DNA of 64,000 nt from Blastocladiella emersonii ATCC 22665 (GCA_025594325.1 JANHCV010000001.1:3534001-3598000), one strand, 5' to 3'. Numbered from the stretch's first letter, positions 47,953 through 59,307 are shown. The notes: generated by a model not told the origin, from the letters alone. Made by a program: numbers and translations.

Positions 47953-48409
47953 GGTCTCTTCTTGAGTGTGCTTCGTGGACTTGCTTTGGGGAAGGAGAGG
48001 ACGCTTGCGCCGGCGCAACAGAGCAAGACGAGAAGAAAGACGACGCGCCTCAGCATCACGTGCGCGATGATGCACGAGCGTCCCGCCCGGCGCGCGCCCG
48101 TCGTCTCGGTCTTCTCCGCCGCCGCCGCCGACGCGTTCGCCAGCGCCGACGAAGCATACGGACACGGCCACTTGCTGCACTGCTCTGCCACCGCGCGCAC
48201 GCGCCCGAACTGCGTGCCACCGACCGGCCCCCTCCCCGTTTTGGATCCCGCCCGAGAGCGCGCGACCACCCTCTTGCACACCGCGCCGCCCGCCGCCAAC
48301 ACTCGCGCGCGCGCCCAACGACCACTACTCGCGCACTCCCTCCCCGCATTGCGTGACTCGCCTACATCCGCCTGCGCCGCGCCGACTACCCTCCACTCCC
48401 TGTACCACC

Positions 48410-49658
48410 ATGTACGCCGGCCTCGGCGGCCAAGACCCGCGGGGCTACGGCCAACCGCCGCAGTTCTCGCAGTACGCCGCTGCCGCCGCCGCCGCGGCCG
48501 CCGCCAACCAGGCCATGGGCTCGCCGCACGGCAGCTACGGCAACCTCATGCTGCCCAACGCAGGCGCCGCCGGCGGCAACGCGGGACCCGACAACGGCGC
48601 GTTCCCGCCCATGCAGTACCCGGGCATGAAGCCGCCAGGCGCGCTCCAGCACCAGCAGCACCAGCAGCACCACGCTCAGCAGCAGCACCAGGCCCAGCAG
48701 CAGGCGCACGCCCAGCAGCAGCACGCCCAGCAGCAGCAGCAGCAGCAGGCGGGCGGCAACGACAATATCATTGACGAGTCGCAGATCTACGCGCTGGTCG
48801 TCGAGATGCTCGACCCGAAGCTGCGCGAGCAGGCGCTGCTCGAGCTCAGCAAGAAGCGCGAGCAGTACGACGACCTGGCGCCGATCCTGTGGCACTCGTT
48901 CGGCGTCATGGCGATCCTGATCCAGGAGATCATCGGCGTGTACCCGCTGCTGTCGCCAGCGACGCTCAGCTCCAACGCGTCCAACCGTGTGTGCAACGCG
49001 CTCGCCCTGCTGCAGTGCATTGCGTCGCACCCCGAGACCCGCGCCCTGTTCCTCAACGCCCACTTCCCGCTGTTCCTCTACCCATTCCTCAACACCACGT
49101 CCAAGGCCCGCCCCTTCGAGTACCTGCGCCTCACCTCGCTCGGCGTCATCGGCGCCCTCGTCAAGAACGACTCGACCGACGTCATCACCTTCCTCCTCAC
49201 CACCGAAATCATCCCGCTGTGCCTGCGCATCATGGAGACGGGCTCCGAGCTGTCCAAGATCGTCGCCATCTTCATTGTCCAGAAGATCCTCCTCGACGAC
49301 ATTGGCCTCTCCTACATCTGCCAGACCTACGAGCGCTTCTACGCCGTCGGCACCGTCCTCGGCGCCATGGTCGCCCAGCTCGTCGAGACCCAGTCCGTGC
49401 GCCTGCTCAAGCACGTCGTCCGCTGCTACCTCCGCCTCAGCGACAACCCGCGGTACGTTTGCTCGACTGACGTGCGCACGCGCGGTGATCACACTCACAC
49501 CTCTCGCGTCTCCCCCATATAGCGCGCGCGAGGCCCTGCGCCAGTGCCTCCCCGAGCCCCTGCGCGACGCCACCTTCTCGTCGGTCCTCAAGGACGACCT
49601 GACGTCGCGCCGGTGCCTCGCCCAGCTGCTTATCAACCTCACCGACAACATGATGTGA
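48410..49658 (+). CDS. CNOT9: CCR4-NOT subunit CNOT9/Rcd1/Caf40, about 392 aa. Exons 48410-49452, 49523-49658
   Basis: [80 protein letters not shown]; N-terminal polyA/Q/H tract. Confidence 0.97.
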
Positions 49659-49894
49659 TCGGGTTCCCCCCTCCCCACCACCATCAACGACGCCGCAACC
49701 ATTCCCTCCTCCTCCCCTCTCTTGTGTAAAGAACCGCTCGCCCTTCCTCTCGCCTTGTCGCTCCATTCGCCGCCATACCTCACCGTCCCGCGCCTCCTTA
49801 GTCCCGCCATTTTCCTCCCACCTCTCTTTCCTCCACATCACCTCACCGTCACCTAACATCCTTATACAGAGCATGATGACTATCTAACCGAGTC

Positions 49895-52881
49895 CTATGA
49901 TTTGAGTAACGACTGGATCGCCACCGACAACAGCGCGCCCATCAGCGTCGCAAACGACGACAGCAGCTCCCGGTTCGCCAGCACGCCAAGGACACGAAGC
50001 CCGCTCACCTCCAGGTCCTCGCGGCAGTTCTCGGCCAGCACCCAGCAGAAGTTGGCCGCACGCTGCATCTCCGACGCGGTCACCGCCGCGGCGGCGGCTG
50101 CGCTTGCGGCCGCCGTGGCTGCGGGTGGTGGGATCCCGGCCGCCGCCGCCGCCGTGTCGTGGAACTGCTGCTGCTGTGCGTGCAGCGCGGCCGACCCGCG
50201 CAGACTGCCCATGGACGTCGGGCCCATGCCGGGCGGCGGGACGAGGAACACGTTGCCGTTCGCGCCCGCGAGCGACGCGTGGCTCGCCGAGACGTGATCG
50301 TGCGCCGCCGCCGCGGGTGGTGCGCGGAGCAGAATCCGCTCGGCGCGCGTCGAGATATCGATCGCCTTCTTGAGCAGCGTGAGCGCGTGCTCCTTGCGCG
50401 CGTCGTTGGCGAGGACGCCGTAGTACAGCGTGTGGGCGATACTCGCGAACAGGTACGCGAGGTTGGCCATGGCGAGGAGCATCCCCGCGCTCGTGTTCAT
50501 CGGCAGGTACTTGAGCAGCAGCAGGATCAGGATGCACGCGACGCCGAGCGCGTACACGATGAAGTACCCCGTGTACACGGAGATGCGCTGCAGGAACCCG
50601 TACCCGTACGCTTGCAGCACCGAGCGGCAGAACCACCACAGCAGCAGGTTGTGCGACCGGTGCATGTCCAGGCGGATCGTGCGCAGATCGACCAGCTGCG
50701 CCGCTGCCGGGTTCACGGACGCCGCCGCCGCGATGCTCCCCGGCAGGCCCGCGTGCGCTGCGTTCACGGCGCGCTTCGCTGTGCTCTTGCCGTCCGGCTT
50801 AGCCGCCGCCGCCGCAGATACCGGCGCGGGGGCTGCCGTGGTCAGCCGAGGCCGCGCCCGCGGCGGCGTCGTCGCGAGCATCGGCTTCTTGGCGAGCCGC
50901 ACGCCCGTCCCGACGTCGCTGCCGTCGGGGTCCGGGTCGGGGTCCGACTTGGCTGCCTCGTCCTCGGCGTCGTTCTCGGCCACCGAGATGAACGGTACGG
51001 GCGGCGGCGGCGGTGGGTGCGCACCTGCGGCGGCCGCAGCGTCGTCGCCGTCCTCCTCGTCAGCGGTCGGCTTGCGCACGAACCCATCGATCAGGATCGC
51101 GTTGAGGCGCATGAAGAGGTAGTGCCGCCTCTGGAAGTCGACCATGCTACAAGATCAGGTCGTGAATGGGTCAGGTCGTGAATGGTGAGCGTTGGTGCTC
51201 GCGGCCGCGGCAACCGAGCCGTACCAGACGATCACGAACGCGAGATTCGACATGACGAGGAAATAACTGAGGCAGAAGTAGCACACCGTGTACACGACAG
51301 CAGTCCACCGCGACCCGCCGAACGGCGAGACGTGCTCGGTGAACCGCGTCACGATCGGGATGATCGAGTAGATGAAGGCTACAATCCCAACCAGCGTTAG
51401 TCGACTGCGCCGCCGCCAACCTCGCTGTGTCGTACCGGACCCGAGGAAGAGGATCGGGCTAGCCTTGAGCTCGTTGCTCTCGTCGACGAGCCCGTTGACC
51501 ACGGCCCACGCCGAGACGCGCGGCACGGGCGGCGGGACTGGCGGCGGGGGCTGCGCCTGTGGCTGCGGGTGGCCTGACGCGAGGAGGTTCCCCGACCCGC
51601 GCAGCCCGCTCCCGCCGCGCACCGTCGGCGGCGACGCCATGGTCGGGACATGCTGCTGCGGCGCAGGCGCGAGCGCGGGCGGGAACTCGCTCGTCGGCGT
51701 GCTCGGTTGCGGCGGCGACCCCGGGCCCGCGCCCGGCCCTGCGATAGGCGACGCGGGCAGCGGCGACACGAGCGCCGTGTCGACGATCTTGTCGAGGAAC
51801 GGGTTGTACCGGTTGTGGATCTCCTGCAGCGCCGAGTTCTCGGACGCACCCGAGACAGCCTTGGGCATGAGCGGGACCGGGTGCGGCGCGGCTGATGGCG
51901 GCGGCAGGGTGTCGGGCGGTACGGCAAAGAACTGGCCGCGCGTCAGGTCGGCCGACTGGCGCGTCGACGCGAGCAGGATCTGTGTCTCGACCAGGTTCTT
52001 GGACGGGTTGATCCAGCCCGTAATGACTACGCGGGAGCCAGGGTGAGTTGGCGGTCGTGCTCGTGTACGGGAGAGAGGGACGTACTCTGCCGTGCCTCGC
52101 GCGCCTCGAGCGGCTCGACGCGCTCCTCCATCTCCTTTTGCTCAAGCGGGCTACATGGCAGCGGTCACGATGAGCTCCACTCTTCGCCGGCCGCGCCACC
52201 AGCGTACCTCGTGAATGCATGCTTGGTTGCGACCACGAGCTGGCGGAACACCCAGAGCCCAACGAGGATCGCCTGCTGCTCAAGCCCAATGTGCTCGGGC
52301 GTGTCGTAGACGTAGATGACACAGCACGCGGTCATCATGAAGAACAGAACCCACTGGACGTAGAACGACCTCGTGTTCCCGATAAAGTCGCGGTTGCGCG
52401 CGCGCAGGCGGCCCGTGTGCGTGAACAGCGTCAACAGGACCACGGGCTGGAAGACGTGGTACACGAACTCGCGCAGAAAGACCCACGGCTGGAAGTAACA
52501 CACGGACAGCGCCACGAGGTACGGGTCCAGCCGCGTCGGATCGACCATGACGTCCTCGTCAAAATCGGAGCGCTCGGGCACGGGTGCCGCACCTGCTGCT
52601 GCCGCCGCCGCCGCCGCGAGATCCGTGTCGAGCAGGCGCCGTGGCGACCGGCGGTTGTGCAGGCGCGTGCGGTGCGCGATGGTCGGGATATACAGCGACC
52701 CGTTGAGTGAGGCGACGGACCCGTTCATGCCGCCGCCGCTGCCCATGCCCGCGGCGCCGCTGATGCTCCCGATCTGGCGCGCGACGCGCTGCACGGTCGC
52801 CGACCCGCGGCGGCCCGCGCTCGCGAGGCTCGACACCGACGCCGCGCCGTGGTCCATGGAGGCGGCGGCAATCCGTTGCAT
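49895..52881 (-). CDS. Multi-pass membrane protein, PHTF/gustatory-receptor-like 7TM ion-channel candidate (paralog A), about 911 aa. Exons 52881-52208, 52150-52086, 52026-51436, 51378-51225, 51146-49895
   Basis: Spliced CDS of 2736 nt is in frame. About 7 hydrophobic segments, two large soluble loops, and a split terminal helix LRVLGVLAN/RELLSSFATLMGALLSVAIQ. Colinear with paralog B. The CDS is firm; the family call is inference. Confidence 0.8.
51155..51185. repeat. Tandem 15-nt duplication (TCAGGTCGTGAATGG x2) in intron 4 of paralog A
   Basis: Exact copies at 51155-51169 and 51171-51185. Confidence 0.9.
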
Positions 52882-53244
52882 CGTGTCACGGCGTCGTCAT
52901 GCGTTCATGGGATGGGGAGCGGGTGGAGGGATCGAAACGATGCGGGGACCGTTGTGACAGCTCCAACTCGGGTGGCGCAACGCGTCAACTGTTTCGAGGC
53001 ACGCCGGGCTAACTCTGGTGCTCCTGCTGGCCTCGCGACGCGAGCCGCGCGAGACATGAGGCGAGGGAGACACGTTTCGGCAGAAGAGACTCAATTGAAT
53101 TTTTACAGGATGGGATGGCATGGGATGGATGCTTCTGCCACTTCAAGGGGAATCAAACACAGACGACAACAGCGAGACCTTGAGCGCGCGGGTCGCGCGG
53201 GAGCACGAGCGCGAGCTTGGCATGGATGTGGCGGCGGCAGCGCC

Positions 53245-53697
53245 TTACTTGTCGCCCATGACAAAGTGCTTGGCCTTCTCGTACAGGCCCTCCTGGTTGG
53301 CGCCCGTGGTGGCGCCCGTGGTGGTGCCCGACGACGACTGCATGCCCGAGGTACCCGTGCCCGTGCCCGACTGCATGCCCGACGTGTCCATGCCCGTCGA
53401 CGAGCGCATGCCGGTGGTGTCCGTGCCCTCGGTCATGTCGCGGATCGAGTCGGCCGCTTTCTGCATATAGCTTTTCTCAGACTCGGGCTCCAGGTGGGCC
53501 TGGGCCGTGTCGGCAGCGCCGCGGGCCTGCGTGCGACGGGGTGATCACGCGTCAGATCACCGTCATGGCCACGGTCGAGGTCGAGGTCGAGCGTCGCGCA
53601 CCTTCTCCTGCATGATCGTCGAGTCGTCCTTCATGCCCTGCGGCATGGCGGCCGCCTTGGCGCGGTCCGAGAGGCTCTGGCGGGTCGTGTCCGACAT
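53245..53697 (-). CDS. HSP12: Hsp12/Hsp9-family LEA-like stress protein, 125 aa. Exons 53697-53602, 53526-53245
   Basis: MSDTTRQSLSDRAKAAAMP...AHLEPESEKSYMQKAADS matches the Hsp12 pattern MSD.GR..l.dKa...P...KS...qPe.eKSy.Q...Ds; upstream TATA box. Confidence 0.75.
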
Positions 53698-53802
53698 GGT
53701 GGTATTGATGCGTAGAGGGTGGGGTGGGTGTGGTGTCGATGCGTAGCAGCTCGAGTGATCCGTCGATGCGAGAGTGGGGATGGCGCGGGGGTCCGTCGCA
53801 GC

Positions 53803-53808
53803 TTTATA
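53803..53808 (-). promoter_or_regulatory. TATA box candidate for HSP12
   Basis: TATAAA on the minus strand about 105 nt before the ATG. Confidence 0.55.
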
Positions 53809-54261
53809 GGTCTCGCTCCGCGACCGACGGCGGGCGGGGAGAGGAGGGCGAGGGAGGGAGGGCGGGCGTGCGCGCCAGCGTGGCACGGCGGCCACGTTGC
53901 CCGCCTCGGTCTGACCTGCTGAGACCAGGGGTGCTGAGACCGCACGGTGCTGCTGCGCGCGTCGAGTTGATGAGGCGGGTGTTCCTGGCCCACCCTGCCC
54001 GCCGGTTCCCGAGCGGGTTCCGCCCGCGTGTGCTGCGCGTTGACGGACCGCGTGGTCGGCTGAGCCACCCTTGCGTGTGCGTTCCCACGCGGCACGCCCA
54101 CATCGGCGATTGCCGTCCATCTGTCCACCACCATCCCATCCATTCGTCCAATCGGGCCACGCATGGGGGTATACGAATGAGTTGGATTGATTGCGGCAGC
54201 AGGACGAGTCTCGGGGAAAATCAAAAGAGCAGCCGGCCCACGCGCGCGCACGCGCCGACGC

Positions 54262-54815
54262 CTACATAATCGTACAACACTTGTTCGGCGACACTTCCCG
54301 CGCCGCAGGCTTGGGCGAGTCGGCCGGCGCCGCGGCCGCGGGCTCGTGCGCCTTGATGACAACGTGCACCACCGTGGCCTCGCCGGGCGTCAGCTTGTGC
54401 GCTACACACGGCGCGCGCGCGCAGCGGGGCGGGGCGTCAGGAACCGTGGCCGTGGCGGCGGAGAGGGAGGGAGCGGGACGCACCTGCCAAGGATCCGGGT
54501 CCCTCGAGGAACCGGCCGCGGAGCAGCAGCCGGATCTGCGCCTGCGCCACGGGCTTCTCGACCGTCAAGTCTACACAGGGGCGGCGGTGGCCGCGCGTCA
54601 GCAGTCGGTCGAGCGGTGCGCCATGCCGACGACGGCGGCAACGCACCTGACGGCCACTCGGCCATGATCCGGCCCGTCACGGAGTCCAGCGTCGCCTCGG
54701 GGTCGAAAATCCACCCGTCCTTGCGCTGCCCGTTCACGAACAGGAGGTTGAGCGCCACCTTGCCCGCGGGCACGGCGGGGCCGGCGGCCGGCGACGTTGC
54801 AGCGGGGTCCGACAT
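54262..54815 (-). CDS. UBL3: Membrane-anchored ubiquitin-fold protein (UBL3/MUB), 131 aa. Exons 54815-54647, 54570-54484, 54401-54262
   Basis: VALNLLFVNG...WIFDPEATLDSV...AEWP, IRLLLRGRFLE, TVVHVVIK, C-terminal CCTIM (palmitoylation Cys + CAAX). Confidence 0.85.
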
Positions 54816-55258
54816 GGCGAGCGTGTAGTGATGTTGCGCCCAGTCCTCGGGTCTGGCGGGCCGAGATGGTGGTTGTGGTGGAAGTGGCGGAGCGGGTCGT
54901 GTGCTCCTAGTTCCAGAGTGATGCCGTGGGATCAATGCGTTGATGCGTAGCAGTGGTGGTGGAGGCGACCATGCAGGCGAGGAGAGAGCGAGGAGACTCG
55001 CGGCAGGTGGGGCCAAGGCCCGACCTTCCCTTCCGAGGCGAGGAGCAGGGCGAGGTGCCTGTGGCGGGCAGGTGACCGAAAGCGCGTCTCCAAAACGCGA
55101 CGCGTCGCGTGGCTGCGAGACGCGAGACGACGACGCGTCGCGCCGCACCGCCGCCTCGAACCGCCTGCGCTGGCCGATCACCCAGGTCCCCCAGCTTCGG
55201 CTGCAGACATGGCCTCCGCTCACCCTTGGCAACTCATGAATGTAATGATACCAACGCC

Positions 55259-57715
55259 ATGGAACCGATTCGGGAAGCCATCCGCCGCATGAGCGTGGAC
55301 CGCCTCGATCCTTCGTCGCCGGTAGGTGAAAAGCTCCTCAACGCAACATCGCCCGTTCTCGATGCACTCGCAACAGTTCGAGTTTCCGCGAGCCAGCTGG
55401 TCGAGGGCCGCCGGCCGTCGCAATCGCAGCTCGAGCAGGTGCCGCCGGTCGTGTCGCGCACGGCCGCGAGCGGGAGCGTGTCCAATGTCTCCTCCATCCA
55501 CGCCCAGGAGGGATCGCTGTACAGCGCTCACGTTACACGGCCCGCTGTCTTCGCCCTCCGAAGGGTACGTCGTCGCCACGCGTGCACTTAAGCTCAGCCC
55601 GTCGCTTACCCGGCCCCGGCCGATCGCAGAGCCCGCGCCGACTCGATCCGCGCAAGCAGTCCGACTACCTGCCCGAGCTCACCGAGGATATCGACATGTC
55701 CGTCGATCCGGCCTCGCTGGACCCGTTCCTGCTCGCGCTCTCGGTTGTCGAATTCCAGCCGCTCGTTTTTCTGCGCGAGTTCTGCCTCCACGCGATGCAG
55801 CATCTTTCTCTCCTCCTGCTCCTGACACACCGGAAACGCGTATTAGCCTACAACCGCGAGTTCATCGGCTGGACCTTTGGGTGCTTCCTCCAGTGGACCA
55901 TGTTTGGATTCATGATGACTTGCGTCGCCATCTTCTTTTGGGACCGTCCCGAGCAGCTCGGGTGGGACGAGCTCGCCATCACCGGTCTTCTTTTCGTGTT
56001 CCGCCACGCCGTCATCGCCTTCAAGTACGCCTTTACGTCGCCCATCGAGCTGCAGCGCATGGAGGAGGAGCTCGAGTCGACCGAGGCCAAGAAGCAGCGT
56101 CAGGGTACGGTTCTACTCCTCGCCGCTCCGCTCGTCGCGCTGACCAGGTACAACTGATCGTATAGTTCTCACGGGATGGAGTCGCCCCAACAAGGAGCTT
56201 GTGCAACGCGAGATCCTGCTCGCGTCCGTGCGCCAGTGGCTCGACCTCACGCAGGGCTACTTTTACGTCAAGAAGGAGCGAGGTAGCGAGCCGAGTCGCA
56301 CCGATGGCGCCGCGCCAGTCCGCCCCGAGGACATTGCCGTCGTCAACGACCTCCACGTACGGTACGCGGCGTACCTCGAGCAACACCAGCAGGCGCCCTG
56401 TGCCACGCCTACGCCCATGGCCAACTGCGGAAAGCCGCGCGACCTGCGCGAGGTGCCCGACCGCGTCGCCGTGTGGAACGTGATCAACGAGCTGATCGAA
56501 GAGTGCCATCGCTCGGTCAAGTCCATGGAGACGAGGTTAATTCCAGGTACGACCACGCCTACAGCGACCCGCAACCGCTGCGATCTGACTATACGCTCGG
56601 TTCTCGATCTAGCCGTCATCTTCTGCGCTATCCCGTTCGCCGTCCGATGGTGGTACGGGCAGTACGTGGTCGCGGGAACGCGGTGGACGGCGTACGCTTA
56701 CGCAGTCGCCTCGGTCTCGGTCAACTTCCTGATGGTCATGTCCAACGTGGGCTTCGTGCACGTTTGGTACGCTCTCGAACATGCAATATAGCGTCCCGAG
56801 CTGACTCGCGACATGTAGCCTGATCGACTTCCAGCGGCGCGAGTACCTCTTCACGCGGCTCAAGGCGATCCTGCTCGACGGCTTCGTTCGCGACGGCCTC
56901 ACGTCGAGCACGCGAACCAGCGACGGGAATCAGGAGAGCACCTCCGTCGTATCGGACCGCAAGGAGCCGACGGCCGTGTCCAACGGCGAGCCACCAGCAG
57001 CAACGGCTGACGGCGAGCCTAGCGCGTCAGGCGGCTCGAGTCCGGACGACCAGTGCAACCTCATCCAACTCGACATGGACTCGAGCCACAACCTTTTGAT
57101 GTGGTGGTACACCCGCCAGATCCTCCAGGACTACGGCAAAGTGTACCTGATGAGGCTGCAGTGTTACTGTGGCACTTTCATCGTCCTCGCGCTGATTCTT
57201 GGGATCATCTTGCTACTGTTCGTGTTCGACAAGCTCAAGACGGTCACGGCGGCGGGCCTCTACTGCGCCGTGTGGATCGTCATCGTCATCTTCGTCGCGC
57301 TCTTCCGCGCGCTGTACGACGGCCTCAACGCCAACTACGTCCGCAAGCAACACTCGCACGTCCTGTTCCGCAAGTCGGTCCGTGCACGCCTCGCGGTCCG
57401 TTGCGCTCGAGCAAGCTGACCGTCCACCGAAACATATAGATCATCCTGTCGACGCGTGCCGAACGCATGCGCGCCAAGAACCGCGAGCGGTCGGCCGAGG
57501 TCAAGGATGCGGCCAACCTGTGCTGGGTCCTCGCGCAGGCGTGTCAAGACGACGAAGAGGCGGGTGCGCTACGCGTCCTCGGGCTACCGTGTAGCCCCGA
57601 GCTTGTCACGTCGTTCGGGAGTATAGCAGTTGCGGCGCTGTCGGCCGGGATGCAGACGATCAGGTCGGGCTCGTTTGGGGTCGTGCCACCTCCGGGTCTC
57701 GGCGGCACGTCTTAG
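55259..57715 (+). CDS. Multi-pass membrane protein, PHTF/gustatory-receptor-like 7TM ion-channel candidate (paralog B), about 716 aa. Exons 55259-55564, 55630-56104, 56166-56546, 56613-56766, 56819-57377, 57440-57715
   Basis: Spliced CDS of 2151 nt is in frame. Shares VDP..LDP.L.ALSV, FLREF, TGW..P.K.LV...ILLAS.RQ, DFQRR.YLF.RL.AIL.DGFVR, LDM..SHNLL.WW..R, AAN.CWVLA..C..D.E...LRVLG with paralog A. Confidence 0.8.
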
Positions 57716-58409
57716 CCACGAATACATTGCGTGGGTCATGAACCAACCTGGCCGCGCTCGAGGGGGCCGAGCCGACGCGTCGAACAAACACGTGAGCGGG
57801 GGCGAGACAGTGTGCTGACAGGGGGAGCCGACTCGGCCTCGATCTGGACATGGCAAGTCCGGATTCCCCGGCGACAGCCGGGTGACTCCAACGCGTCGAA
57901 CAGGGCTGATGGGTGTGACAGGGGCCTGTCGGCCCCGCCTGGTGTGCTGATCGGCTGGCGTTCGGTTTCGCTGGCCGCGAACGACTTTTATGCTCCCTCA
58001 CTTGCTCCCACCACCCCGCAACCATGAAGTCGCCTGCTCCCTGCAATGCACTCGAATGGATCACGGCCGTCGCCTGCGCCACACCACGATGAGGGCCATC
58101 CTGCGCTATGGAGAGGAAACGGCATCCACCTGCTCTAGCTCGGCTGTTCGTCAGCAGCGGCGGCTTGAAGAACTTGACACGACACCGAGCAGTGATCCGC
58201 AGCGCTTCCGCAGCGAGTCCACTCGTGTGGGTCGGTGCTGCCGAACCGCGGACCGCTGCGCGCCTTGCGGTGAGCGGTCGAGCTCGACGGGTCGGTCGGC
58301 CGCTGCTGAAACGACGCGACGGCTTCGTGGGGGTGAGCGACAATTTTTAGCGACGCGTCTCTCTACTCCGAGTCGGAATCGTCGGTGAGCGAACGAACGA
58401 GCGAAGAAG

Positions 58410-58417: not shown

Positions 58418-58521
58418 CATGGCGTGCCCCGGCTTCCCCTTCCACTTGATCAGCACCCTCAGCAGCTTTCTTGACCACCGCTCGCTCCCTCAACACTGCC
58501 ACCACCACCACCACCACCAAG

Positions 58522-59307
58522 ATGACCTTCTGCGCCCCGATCCACGTCCCCGCCGTCCAGACCCAGTCGCAGTCGCAGTCGCAGGCCCAGTTTGGCGGCC
58601 ACGGCGCTCAGTCGCAGTCGCAGTCGCAGTCGCAGACCCAGTTCGGCCACGGCTCGGGCGCCCAGCAGCAGTCGCAGTCGCAGTCGCAGTCGCAGTCGCA
58701 GTCGCAGTCCCAGTTTGGCGGCGACGCCGTGCAGTCGCAGTCCCAGTCGCAGTCGCAGTCGCAGTTCCAGGGCCACCACTCGGTCGACCAGGCCCAGTCC
58801 CAGTCGCAGACCCAGTTCGGCCACGGCCACGGTGCCCAGCAGCAGTCGCAGTCGCAGTCCCAGTCGCAGTGGGGCAACGGCCACGGCGACGCCGCTCAGT
58901 CGCAGTCGCAGTCGCAGTTCCAGGGCAACTGGGGCAACCATCACTCGGTCGACCAGACCCAGTCGCAGTCGCAGGCCCAGTTCGGCGGTCACGGTGCTCA
59001 GTCGCAGTCCCAGCAGCAGTCGCAGACTCAGTGGGGCACCGGCCACGGCGACGCCGCGCAGCACCAGTCGCAGTCGCAGGGCCAGTGGTCCAACGGCCAC
59101 GGCGACGCGTTCCAGTCGCAGTCGCAGTCGCAGACCCAGTTCCAGGGCCACCACTCGGCCGACGGCTTCGTTGGCGGCAACCCCGCCACCTGGGGTCCCT
59201 CGGGCGACTGCAGCACCACCGGCAACGGCGGCGACATGCACATCATGCCCATCAACAACAACGACTGCGACGTGACGATCCTGCCCATCAACCACGGCTG
59301 CTGCTAA
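58522..59307 (+). CDS. Uncharacterised Gln-Ser/Gly-His repeat protein, 261 aa, intronless
   Basis: ATG in good context; 11 units of (QS)n-Q-[F/W]-G-x-(G/H)-H; unique N- and C-terminal caps with 5 Cys, ending in GCC; GC3-biased codons. Confidence 0.8.
   Translation: MTFCAPIHVPAVQTQSQSQSQAQFGGHGAQSQSQSQSQTQFGHGSGAQQQSQSQSQSQSQSQSQFGGDAVQSQSQSQSQSQFQGHHSVDQAQSQSQTQFGHGHGAQQQSQSQSQSQWGNGHGDAAQSQSQSQFQGNWGNHHSVDQTQSQSQAQFGGHGAQSQSQQQSQTQWGTGHGDAAQHQSQSQGQWSNGHGDAFQSQSQSQTQFQGHHSADGFVGGNPATWGPSGDCSTTGNGGDMHIMPINNNDCDVTILPINHGCC
58558..59163 (+). repeat. Coding tandem repeats built on the CAGTCG hexamer
   Basis: Runs of CAGTCG/CAGTCC separated by CAGTT[C/T]GGC/CAGTGGGGC...GGCCAC spacers. Confidence 0.9.

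What the first reader, a model, noticed from the sequence alone, without database searches (positions are those of the whole stretch)
49895..57715. Two divergent paralogs that look like PHTF / insect odorant-gustatory-receptor (7TM ion channel) proteins: candidate zoospore or gamete chemoreceptors
SEEN: two intron-split genes (about 911 and 716 aa) that the ORF track breaks into unrecognisable fragments. Both have the same layout: a short N-terminal hydrophobic stretch (PxVFLREF), TM1-TM2, a large loop, TM3-TM4 ending in DFQRRxYLFxRL, a second loop ending in LDMxxSHNLLxWWxxRxxLxxYG, TM5-TM6 ending in GxxAN, a helical linker (AANxCWVLAxxCxxD), then a split last helix (LRVLG / ELxxSF...LS(V/A)xxQ). 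KNOWN: a split TM7a/7b, long helical intracellular extensions and a large first loop characterise the Or/Gr 7TM-ion-channel superfamily. Structural screens have placed vertebrate PHTF1/2, plant DUF3537 and some protist and chytrid proteins in that superfamily. The order of motifs matches human PHTF as I recall it (TYKQRLLF..LF; NIKMWLSLRSYL..RG; LGSET; FRLYG). INFERENCE: these may be ligand-gated cation channels in a flagellated fungus. Allomyces-type gametes (sirenin, Ca2+-dependent) and zoospores (amino acids) are chemotactic, and to my knowledge the receptors have not been identified. Two diverged copies could be subunits of a heteromer or differ in specificity.
Basis: partly seen in the sequence, partly recalled or inferred. 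Interest (0 to 1): 0.9.

Follow-up and report, generated by a model that had tools for sequence, protein, structure and literature searches.

The report
Two PHTF-like seven-helix channel-family genes
A zoospore-forming fungus (Blastocladiella emersonii) carries two old, diverged gene copies whose predicted proteins have the same fold as insect smell and taste receptor channels and human PHTF proteins; the fold is well supported, but any role as a chemoreceptor is untested.

Summary
Window 49895-52881 (minus strand) and 55259-57715 (plus strand) hold two intron-split paralogs of 911 aa (5 exons) and 716 aa (6 exons). The genome is Blastocladiella emersonii ATCC 22665, and both genes are annotated only as hypothetical proteins.

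No Pfam family matches. Sequence similarity to PHTF is only at motif level (shuffle p about 0.004).

Seven-helix channel (7TMIC) proteins were already reported in Blastocladiomycota in 2023, so these are new members of a known kind. The channel and chemoreceptor roles are untested. Low copy number and conservation concentrated on the cytoplasmic side argue against a diversified chemoreceptor repertoire.

The parts
49895..52881 (-). [quoted passage not shown] Exons 52881-52208, 52150-52086, 52026-51436, 51378-51225, 51146-49895.
55259..57715 (+). Gene B (H9P43_001361): 6 exons, 716 aa in my model (626 aa in the public annotation). Exons 55259-55564, 55630-56104, 56166-56546, 56613-56766, 56819-57377, 57440-57715.
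52465..52527 (-). Gene A N-terminal hydrophobic helix-break-helix (DPYLVALSVCYFQPWVFLREF), the candidate re-entrant TM0.
   Evidence: Hydropathy peak. Short helices 120-126 and 132-143 in the model.
55720..55782 (+). Gene B candidate TM0 (DPFLLALSVVEFQPLVFLREF).
   Evidence: Model helices 44-50 and 56-67 in P0004 numbering. Some VIA alignments start at model residue 39-44, matching chain residue 14-27.
51944..52024 (-). Gene A conserved start of IL1 (ITGW..P..QILLAS.RQ..DL), the family's cytoplasmic signature after TM2.
   Evidence: W, R and A columns are 95-100% conserved across the family.
56168..56248 (+). Gene B conserved start of IL1 (LTGWSRPNKELVQREILLASVRQWLDL).
51083..51307 (-). Gene A TM4 with its long cytoplasmic extension ending in DFQRRHYLFMRLNAILIDG (crosses intron 51224-51147).
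   Evidence: Continuous helix 468-515 in the model. D and RR are nearly invariant.
56684..56882 (+). Gene B TM4 plus extension ending in DFQRREYLFTRLKAILLDG (crosses intron 56767-56818).
   Evidence: Helix 322-369 in P0004 numbering. Conservation.
50507..50674 (-). Gene A cytoplasmic start of TM5 and its membrane span (RLDMHRSHNLLLWWFCRSVLQAYG, then the TM span). This is the most conserved block and matches the PHTF motif N..MW...R..L...G in register.
57066..57224 (+). Gene B TM5 block (QLDMDSSHNLLMWWYTRQILQDYG, then the TM span).
50387..50491 (-). Gene A TM6 with cytoplasmic extension and the G...N motif (GVLAND).
   Evidence: Helix 714-769. G and N are 96-100% conserved.
57249..57353 (+). 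Gene B TM6 with extension (..YDGLNANYVRKQH).
   Evidence: Helix 493-545 in P0004 numbering. Conservation.
49898..50071 (-). Gene A split last helix: TM7a (EMQRAANFCWVLAENCREDLE), break at LRVLG, then TM7b (RELLSSFATLMGALLSVAIQSLLKS).
   Evidence: DSSP helices 837-876 and 887-910 with a break at 877-886, pLDDT about 90 or above.
57497..57664 (+). Gene B split last helix: TM7a, break at LRVLGLPCS, then TM7b (PELVTSFGSIAVAALSAGMQTIR).
   Evidence: DSSP helices 550-576 and 588-610 with a break at 577-587, pLDDT 92-96. The G of LRVLG is 95% conserved.
51379..51435 (-). Gene A in-frame, stop-free 57-nt intron (GTACGA..CTAAC..TGTAG). It shares its position with gene B, just before TM3.
56547..56612 (+). 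Gene B in-frame, stop-free 66-nt intron (GTACGA..CTGAC..TCTAG) at the same position.

Best explanation
The two genes are old paralogs. [quoted passage not shown]

Shown: each predicted protein has
- an N-terminal hydrophobic hairpin (candidate TM0);
- seven membrane helices packed as in Or/Gr structures;
- short outer loops;
- a long first intracellular loop whose start is conserved;
- long cytoplasmic extensions of TM4, TM5 and TM6;
- a last helix split into TM7a and TM7b.

Inferred from solved Or/Gr channels: four subunits (homo- or hetero-tetramers of A and B) would assemble through the conserved cytoplasmic 'anchor' made of the TM4-6 extensions and TM7a. TM7b would line a central cation pore.

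The gating signal is unknown. Conservation is concentrated on the cytoplasmic side and the family is low-copy. I therefore think a conserved cell-biological role, gated or regulated from inside the cell, is more likely than a diversified external chemoreceptor role. That role may be tied to making or operating the flagellated zoospore.
For: Paralogy and gene models.

Confident AF2 models from a 29-30 sequence family alignment: B has pLDDT 83.8 and pTM 0.83; A has 427 residues above pLDDT 90.

Fold:
- In Foldseek against PDB, 13 of the 13 best hits are insect Gr/Or/Orco.

Predicted-structure libraries: in Swiss-Prot AFDB, PHTF2 and PHTF1 are best (E 1.4e-4 to 2e-3), followed by Gr, Or and Orco. 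In AFDB clusters the top hits are an unnamed transmembrane protein A0A078AVP9 (E 7e-13, TM 0.56), T. brucei GRL1 (Q57U78), protist 'gustatory receptor' entries and PHTF.

Protein-language-model neighbours include DUF3537 (0.90) and 7tm_7 clusters (0.85).

Anatomy: helix lengths, the split TM7 and loop lengths come.

Conservation falls on the cytoplasmic ends of TM2/4/5/6, the start of IL1 and the TM7a-7b junction. This matches the anchor-domain conservation pattern described for 7TMICs in bioRxiv 10.1101/2023.08.30.555482.

PHTF motifs are colinear with the family motifs. A PHTF2 fragment aligns to the homologous profile position, and 7 of 2000 shuffles reach its score.
Against: - No Pfam family (7tm_6, 7tm_7, DUF3537, PHTF N-terminal domain) matches any of the 29 family members.
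- A family profile finds no Or/Gr in PDB sequences.
- The PHTF sequence signal is only 2.2 bits.
- Global TM-scores to Or/Gr and PHTF are 0.25-0.49 because of the long loops.
- The Gr pore motif TYhhhhhQF is absent. Only a Q near the end of TM7b is kept, and only within Blastocladiomycota.
- Tetramer formation, a pore, ion conduction, membrane orientation, localisation and expression were not tested.
- A positive-inside count is weak: 16 K+R in 105 inner flank residues against 5 in 42 outer residues.
- Both structures are predictions, and convergence of the fold cannot be excluded.
Confidence: 0.8

Rival explanations
1. One reading: A and B are ligand-gated cation channels in the zoospore plasma or flagellar membrane. 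They sense external chemicals (for example amino acids) and drive chemotaxis or settlement. The two copies would be heteromer subunits or differ in specificity.
For: The proteins share the fold of insect chemoreceptor channels. Zoospores of the related genus Allomyces are chemotactic to amino acids, and the 2017 preprint read names no receptor. Every named taxon with the family has a flagellated stage: Blastocladiomycota, chytrids, Marchantia, Mesostigma and Lapot. The Blastocladiomycota members keep a Q near the outer end of TM7b, roughly where the Gr gating Q lies; this position is known only to within about one residue.
Against: I saw one to three proteins per species and no expansion. Conserved columns are cytoplasmic, while the outer halves of the helices, where Or/Gr ligands bind, are not conserved. 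The TM7b motif is not kept outside Blastocladiomycota. There are no expression or localisation data. The closest named relatives, PHTF proteins, are reported in the endoplasmic reticulum of male germ cells and have no known ligand. CatSper is the candidate discussed for sirenin.
Confidence: 0.12
2. A and B are PHTF-type proteins of internal membranes (ER). They act mainly as scaffolds or regulators through their long cytoplasmic loops, for example by recruiting partners as PHTF1 recruits FEM1B. They would not be sensory channels and perhaps not channels at all.
For: PHTF2 and PHTF1 are the best Swiss-Prot structural matches, and the motifs are colinear with PHTF. IL1 is long and has a strongly conserved start. 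Rat PHTF1 is reported at the ER and binds FEM1B.
Against: The PHTF N-terminal FEM1B-binding domain (PF12129) is not detected. The anchor and TM7 architecture typical of the channels is fully kept with high model confidence. No function is established for any PHTF.
Confidence: 0.3
3. The resemblance is convergent, or an artefact of prediction on a shallow alignment: a lineage-restricted multi-pass membrane protein family unrelated to 7TMICs.
Against: All solved Or/Gr/Orco representatives, and nothing else, occupy the top ranks in two independent aligners, with about 320 of about 380 residues aligned and a clear gap to the next hits. The unusual split TM7 and the long TM4-6 are reproduced in both paralogs. 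The PHTF motif aligns at the homologous position. Protein-language-model neighbours point independently to DUF3537 and 7tm_7.
Confidence: 0.05

Closest known systems
PHTF1/PHTF2/Phtf ('Class-B' eukaryotic 7TMICs; Benton & Himmel 2023, eLife e85537; Himmel et al. 2023, bioRxiv 10.1101/2023.08.30.555482)
   Same: They share the seven-helix core with a split TM7 and a long first intracellular loop, and both are low-copy and strongly conserved. PHTF2 and PHTF1 are the best Swiss-Prot structural hits. The motifs are colinear: an acidic-basic cluster followed by LFxKL/LFxRL at the TM4 end; N..MW...R..L...G at the TM5 start, in register; G...N after TM6 (PHTF1); and xRxxGL...P at the TM7a-7b break.
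   Different: The PF12129 N-terminal domain is not detected. IL1 is shorter (about 145-210 aa against more than 300 aa). A long, disordered IL2 is present here, whereas the PHTF sequences printed have only about 35 residues there. Sequence similarity is marginal, and orthology was not tested by phylogeny.
Insect gustatory and odorant receptors and Orco (BmGr9, Gr43a, Gr64a, MhOr5, OR28, OR10, Orco)
   Different: Identity is 6-11%, and there is no 7tm_6 or 7tm_7 Pfam match. The TYhhhhhQF motif is absent. The proteins are much longer because of IL1 and IL2. There is no family expansion, and conservation is cytoplasmic rather than in a ligand pocket.
Chytrid GRLs (Spizellomyces SpunGRL1/SpalGRL1; Benton et al. 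2020, eLife e62507) and plant DUF3537
   Same: They belong to the same superfamily and occur in zoosporic fungi and plants. DUF3537 clusters appear among the protein-language-model neighbours (score 0.90).
   Different: Those proteins are 350-500 aa 'Class-A' proteins that were found by sequence similarity to Grs. The family here is 600-900 aa, has no Pfam DUF3537 or 7tm_7 hit, and was not listed in that survey.
Unnamed protist 7TMIC-like proteins (AFDB cluster A0A078AVP9; ESM Atlas cluster of 177 members, mostly ciliates) and T. brucei GRL1 (Q57U78)
   Same: These are the closest structural neighbours overall: E 7e-13 with TM 0.56/0.57, and TM 0.58/0.76 over 415 residues at 3.8 A. The protein-language-model feature score is 0.97.
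   Different: No sequence-level link was found by HMMER. Their function is unknown.

Membership tests
7TMIC superfamily (Or/Gr/GRL/DUF3537/PHTF fold) | Seven TM helices with the characteristic Or/Gr packing | tested here: met
7TMIC superfamily (Or/Gr/GRL/DUF3537/PHTF fold) | TM7 split into a cytoplasmic TM7a and a membrane TM7b | tested here: met
   B has helices 550-576 and 588-610 with a break at 577-587. A has helices 837-876 and 887-910. pLDDT is above 90.
7TMIC superfamily (Or/Gr/GRL/DUF3537/PHTF fold) | Long TM4, TM5 and TM6 helices projecting into the cytoplasm (anchor domain) | tested here: met
   B has continuous helices 322-369 (48 aa), 456-484 preceded by 438-453, and 493-545 (53 aa). 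A has helices 468-515, 677-705 and 714-769. Conservation is concentrated there.
7TMIC superfamily (Or/Gr/GRL/DUF3537/PHTF fold) | Shorter extracellular than intracellular loops | tested here: met
   In B the loops TM1-2, TM3-4 and TM5-6 are 7, 10 and 8 aa, whereas IL1 is 145 aa and IL2 about 68 aa or more.
7TMIC superfamily (Or/Gr/GRL/DUF3537/PHTF fold) | N-terminal re-entrant loop (TM0) | tested here: inconclusive
   A hydrophobic helix-break-helix lies at P0004 residues 42-67. Some alignments include it (model 39-44 matched to chain 14-27). Re-entrant geometry was not inspected.
7TMIC superfamily (Or/Gr/GRL/DUF3537/PHTF fold) | [quoted passage not shown] | tested here: inconclusive
   The K+R count is 16 in the inner flanks against 5 in the outer loops, but the densities are similar. 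The loop-length pattern fits. No topology predictor or experiment was available.
7TMIC superfamily (Or/Gr/GRL/DUF3537/PHTF fold) | Tetramer with a TM7b-lined cation pore; channel activity | not testable with these tools
   Only single-chain prediction was available, and there is no electrophysiology.
PHTF / Class-B 7TMICs | [quoted passage not shown] | tested here: met
   IL1 is about 145 aa in B and about 210 aa in A. The criterion is as stated in bioRxiv 10.1101/2023.08.30.555482.
PHTF / Class-B 7TMICs | PHTF1/2 N-terminal domain (Pfam PF12129) | tested here: not met
   No Pfam hit at E up to 1 for the exon pieces or for any of the 29 family members.
PHTF / Class-B 7TMICs | Sequence similarity to PHTF over the TM4-TM7 core | tested here: inconclusive
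   The motifs are colinear, and one is in register (N..MW...R..L...G). A 45-aa PHTF2 fragment aligns at the homologous profile position with 2.2 bits, reached by 7 of 2000 shuffles. Foldseek gives E 1.4e-4 at 12-13% identity.
PHTF / Class-B 7TMICs | Placement inside the PHTF or Class-B clade in a phylogeny | not tested
   No PHTF or Class-A sequence set could be loaded by reference. The tree holds this family only.
Insect-type Gr/GRL (Pfam 7tm_7) and DUF3537 | Pfam 7tm_7, 7tm_6, Trehalose_recp or DUF3537 match; length 350-500 aa | tested here: not met
   No such Pfam hit. The lengths are 716 and 911 aa.
Insect-type Gr/GRL (Pfam 7tm_7) and DUF3537 | TM7 motif TYhhhhhQF | tested here: not met
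   TM7b reads ..SFGSIAVAALSAGMQTI in B and ..SFATLMGALLSVAIQSL in A. Only a Q near the end is kept, and only within Blastocladiomycota; chytrid and plant members have K, R or L there.

The most novel reading that the evidence does not exclude
This family, together with animal PHTF, may be an ancestral 7TMIC lineage tied to flagellated cells (sperm and zoospores).

In an exhaustive HMMER scan of 1.84 billion representatives it has only 28 hits. Every named source has a flagellated stage: Blastocladiomycota, chytrids, the liverwort Marchantia, Mesostigma and the flagellate Lapot. No non-flagellated fungus and no seed plant appears among the named hits. The closest named structural relatives, PHTFs, are most highly expressed in spermatocytes and spermatids.

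If this reading is correct, the two Blastocladiella genes would encode a conserved channel needed to build or steer the zoospore. They would also offer a simple microbial model for the unknown function of human PHTF1/2.
Probability: 0.15. Interest if true: 0.75.

Novelty: new member of a known kind. Interest (0 to 1): 0.42.

Why it matters
The 7TMIC fold underlies insect smell and taste. Its PHTF branch is conserved up to humans, yet no PHTF has a known function. These two genes give that branch confidently modelled members in a unicellular, synchronously differentiating fungus, with clear motifs to mutate (DFQRR, N..WW..R...Q..G, G...N, LRVLG, and the TM7b Q).

This does not open a new category: 7TMICs in Blastocladiomycota and chytrids were already reported collectively in 2023. 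What it adds:
- corrected gene models;
- evidence that the A/B duplication predates the Blastocladiella-Catenaria split;
- a distribution limited, as far as seen, to lineages with flagellated cells, which suggests where to look for function.

The genes are only weak candidates for the still-unidentified zoospore chemoreceptors.

Tried and rejected
1. Pfam on the seven ORF pieces and on 29 full-length family members gave nothing relevant.

2. Word-indexed homolog searches with P0001, with P0004 and with a trimmed 13-sequence core alignment were saturated by low-complexity words. They returned only 1, 3 and 6 proteins and added just two Allomyces proteins, P0031 (A. arbusculus) and P0035 (AMAG_02516).

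3. A family profile against PDB sequences gave only somatostatin-receptor noise at E 0.04-0.4 over one hydrophobic stretch. I rejected this as a GPCR signal because no GPCR appears in either structural search.

4. RNA-seq support was not available. No RNA run was listed, only three DNA runs from the likely source sample.

5. My first exon models read through an in-frame intron (930 and 738 aa). I corrected them after comparison with the database proteins and the splice consensus.

6. The positive-inside count was too weak to fix the membrane orientation.

7. A match to the Gr TM7 motif was rejected.

8. I searched the 182 supplement files of eLife e85537 for Allomyces, Catenaria, Marchantia, Mesostigma, Stylonychia and 'chytri' and found no occurrence. 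The one supplement file held for the 2023 preprint had no match either. I therefore could not confirm that these exact proteins are in the published sets.

9. The published Current Biology version is not held in the library.

10. A literature search for the gene and locus identifiers found nothing.

Only one 45-aa fragment printed was scored.

Full report
**Observation**

Six-frame translation of 49800-53000 (minus strand) and 55200-57900 (plus strand) shows two colinear sets of ORF pieces. I joined them at GT..AG sites that fit the local consensus: GTACG donor, CTRAC branch point, YAG acceptor. This gave two paralogous proteins.

I then compared them with database proteins recovered later. 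Both genes carry a further in-frame, stop-free intron at the same position: A 51435-51379 (57 nt) and B 56547-56612 (66 nt). Both start GTACGA, have CTAAC or CTGAC, and end TAG.

- Gene A final model: 5 exons and 911 aa, identical to KAI9189925.1 (H9P43_001358).
- Gene B final model: 6 exons and 716 aa.
- The public model for B (H9P43_001361, 626 aa) drops 90 N-terminal residues through a weak GTGGAC donor. The 716-aa model uses a consensus GTACGT donor and keeps residues similar to A (GSLY, RRSPRRL).

The proteins are about 40% identical. Three introns are shared, one is private to A and two are private to B. No RNA run was listed, so the models lack transcript support.

**Source and family**

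The genome is Blastocladiella emersonii ATCC 22665. I ran an exhaustive HMMER scan of 1.84 billion representative proteins with A's last exon (416 aa). It found only 28 proteins at E up to 0.001. The named sources are:

- B. emersonii (both genes) and B. britannica;
- Catenaria anguillulae, including two adjacent genes, ORZ33636 and ORZ33637;
- Allomyces javanicus; two more Allomyces proteins, A. arbusculus and A. macrogynus AMAG_02516, came from the word-indexed searches;
- the chytrids Dinochytrium, Chytridium lagenaria, Chytridiales sp. JEL0842 and Blyttiomyces;
- Marchantia polymorpha, Mesostigma viride and Lapot gusevi.

The remainder are unnamed metagenomic or Logan proteins. All are 'hypothetical', and no paper mentions the identifiers.

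A maximum-likelihood tree gives a Blastocladiomycota clade with 100/100 support. Gene B groups with both Catenaria proteins and the B. britannica protein (100/99), to the exclusion of gene A. The A/B duplication is therefore older than the Blastocladiella-Catenaria split.

No Pfam model matches the exon pieces or any of the 29 members. A family profile finds nothing meaningful among PDB sequences.

**Fold**

AlphaFold2 on gene B's annotated protein with the 29-sequence alignment gave mean pLDDT 83.8 and pTM 0.83, with 427 residues above 90. Gene A gave pLDDT 69.5 overall. Its core is also above 90, and the low values are confined to the loops.

| Search | Result |
|---|---|
| Foldseek, PDB | The 13 best hits are all insect Gr43a, OR28, BmGr9, Gr64a, OR10, OR5-Orco or Orco |
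| Foldseek, Swiss-Prot AFDB | PHTF2 and PHTF1 first (E 1.4e-4 to 2e-3, residues about 206-611), then Gr, Or and Orco |
| Foldseek, AFDB clusters | Unnamed A0A078AVP9 (E 7e-13, TM 0.56/0.57), T. brucei GRL1, protist 'gustatory receptor' entries, PHTF |
| ESM Atlas, by shape | One real match: an unnamed, mostly ciliate cluster (TM 0.58/0.76, 415 residues, 3.8 A) |

Protein-language-model neighbours include DUF3537 (0.90) and 7tm_7 clusters (0.85). No transporter or GPCR fold competes.

**Anatomy (annotated gene B protein, P0004 numbering)**

- Candidate TM0: 42-67.
- TM1 95-116 and TM2 124-146.
- IL1 147-291, with a conserved start (KYA..SP.E...RQ.LTGW..P...QLLAS.RQ..DL) and an amphipathic helix before TM3.
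- TM3 292-311.
- TM4 322-369, one 48-residue helix ending in DFQRREYLFTRLKAILLDG.
- IL2 370-437, disordered.
- TM5 438-484, starting N..WW..R...Q..G.....R.
- TM6 493-545, 53 residues, containing G...N.
- TM7a 550-576, a break at 577-587 (LRVLG), and TM7b 588-610.

The outer loops are 7, 10 and 8 residues long. Columns conserved at 75% or more across the family lie almost entirely at the cytoplasmic ends of TM2, TM4, TM5 and TM6, at the start of IL1, and at the G of the TM7a-7b break. Published work describes conservation for 7TMICs in the anchor domain, TM7b and TM5-TM6. This family matches the anchor-domain part of that pattern.

A positive-inside count is only weakly consistent with an N-in topology.

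**Relation to PHTF**

They are printed in the PHTF FASTA supplements of eLife e85537. They line up in the same order with the family motifs:

| Position | PHTF | This family |
|---|---|---|
| TM4 end | ERTYKQRLLFAKLF | DFQRREYLFTRLK |
| TM5 start | NIKMWLSLRSYLKRRG | NLLMWWYTRQILQDYG |
| After TM6 | LGSETN | DGLNAN |
| TM7a-7b break | FRLYGLTMNP | LRVLGLPCSP |

At the TM5 start, N, M, W, R, L and G are in register.

I scored one 45-aa PHTF2 fragment against the family HMM. It aligned at exactly the homologous profile position with 2.2 bits, a score reached by 7 of 2000 shuffles. That is supportive but marginal, and the PF12129 N-terminal domain is absent.

I therefore call the family PHTF-like by architecture and motifs. 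I do not call it a proven PHTF ortholog.

The Gr pore motif TYhhhhhQF is not present. Only a Q near the outer end of TM7b is kept, and only within Blastocladiomycota. From the ends of the alignment ranges it falls within about one residue of the Gr gating Q. I could not check this residue by residue.

**Prior knowledge**

- Benton et al. 2020 found fungal GRLs only in Spizellomyces. Their criteria (350-500 aa) would have excluded this family.
- Benton & Himmel 2023 placed PHTFs in the 7TMIC fold, and their supplements do not name these taxa.
- Himmel et al. 2023 screened AlphaFold DB widely, defined Class-A and the PHTF-like Class-B, and state that their 'Fungi' are Chytridiomycota and Blastocladiomycota.

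The Allomyces macrogynus and Catenaria proteins are in UniProt, so they were probably within reach of that screen. I could not confirm this. The kind is therefore known, and these specific genes are undescribed.

**Function**

Shown: the fold, the architecture, the conservation pattern, the paralogy and the taxonomic range.

Inferred by analogy with solved Or/Gr channels: tetramers held by the cytoplasmic anchor, with TM7b lining a cation pore.

Untested: everything about ligand, localisation, timing of expression and heteromer formation.

The chemoreceptor idea remains possible. Allomyces zoospores respond to amino acids, and the 2017 preprint read names no receptor. Several points count against it:

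- the copy number is low;
- conservation is on the cytoplasmic side;
- PHTF1 is reported in the endoplasmic reticulum;
- for sirenin, CatSper is the candidate discussed in the literature.

One pattern is worth following. Every named taxon with the family has flagellated cells, and animal PHTFs are enriched in spermatocytes and spermatids. This rests on a single-sequence search, so absence from other taxa is not secure.

**Verdict**

The 7TMIC/PHTF-like reading is supported, and the chemoreceptor reading is untested and less likely than a conserved non-sensory or internally gated role. These are new members of a known kind, of moderate interest.

Noticed in passing
window 55259-55629: The public model of gene B (H9P43_001361, 626 aa) splices from a weak GTGGAC donor after MEPIREAIRRMS straight to SPRRLD. 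A consensus GTACGT donor at 55565 gives a 716-aa protein whose extra 90 residues resemble gene A's N-terminus. Transcript data are needed to decide between the two.
   Followed up: partly
window 51379-51435 and 56547-56612: Both paralogs have an in-frame, stop-free intron (57 and 66 nt) at the same site just before TM3. If the intron were retained, 19 or 22 residues would be inserted without breaking the frame, which could yield an alternative isoform.
   Followed up: partly
window 57378-57439: Gene B alone has a phase-0 intron between TM6 and the exon encoding TM7a/7b. This recalls the conserved phase-0 intron before the TM7 exon of animal Gr genes. Positional equivalence was not tested, and gene A lacks the intron.
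   Followed up: no
window 51147-51224: Gene A's last intron (78 nt) contains a tandem duplication of CCATTCACGACCTGA, which doubles the branch-point-like CTGAC region. An earlier scan note records the same thing.
   Followed up: partly
P0002 and P0006 (Catenaria ORZ33636 and ORZ33637); P0011, P0016 and P0018 (Chytridium lagenaria KAI8847756, KAI8847761, KAI8847762): Family members sit next to each other on one contig in Catenaria, and three lie close together on one contig in Chytridium lagenaria. These may be local duplications or split gene models. The C-terminus of Catenaria P0006 departs from the family alignment at TM7 as if frameshifted or mis-spliced.
   Followed up: no
window 48353-49522 (+): The neighbouring gene is a CNOT9/Rcd1 homolog (Pfam Rcd1, E 3e-107) with a long Ala/Gln/His-rich N-terminal extension.
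   Followed up: partly
window 53245-55232 (-): Two small genes lie between the head-to-head paralogs. By eye they look like an HSP12-type protein (MSDTTRQSLSDRAKAA...) and a UBL3/MUB-type ubiquitin-fold protein (..KVALNLLFVNGQRKDGWIFDPEATL..). The raw ORFs gave no Pfam hit, and exon models were not built.
   Followed up: partly
window 58471-59307 (+): An ORF of 278 aa is made of (QS)n-rich repeats with Gly, His and aromatic residues. It has no Pfam match.
   Followed up: no
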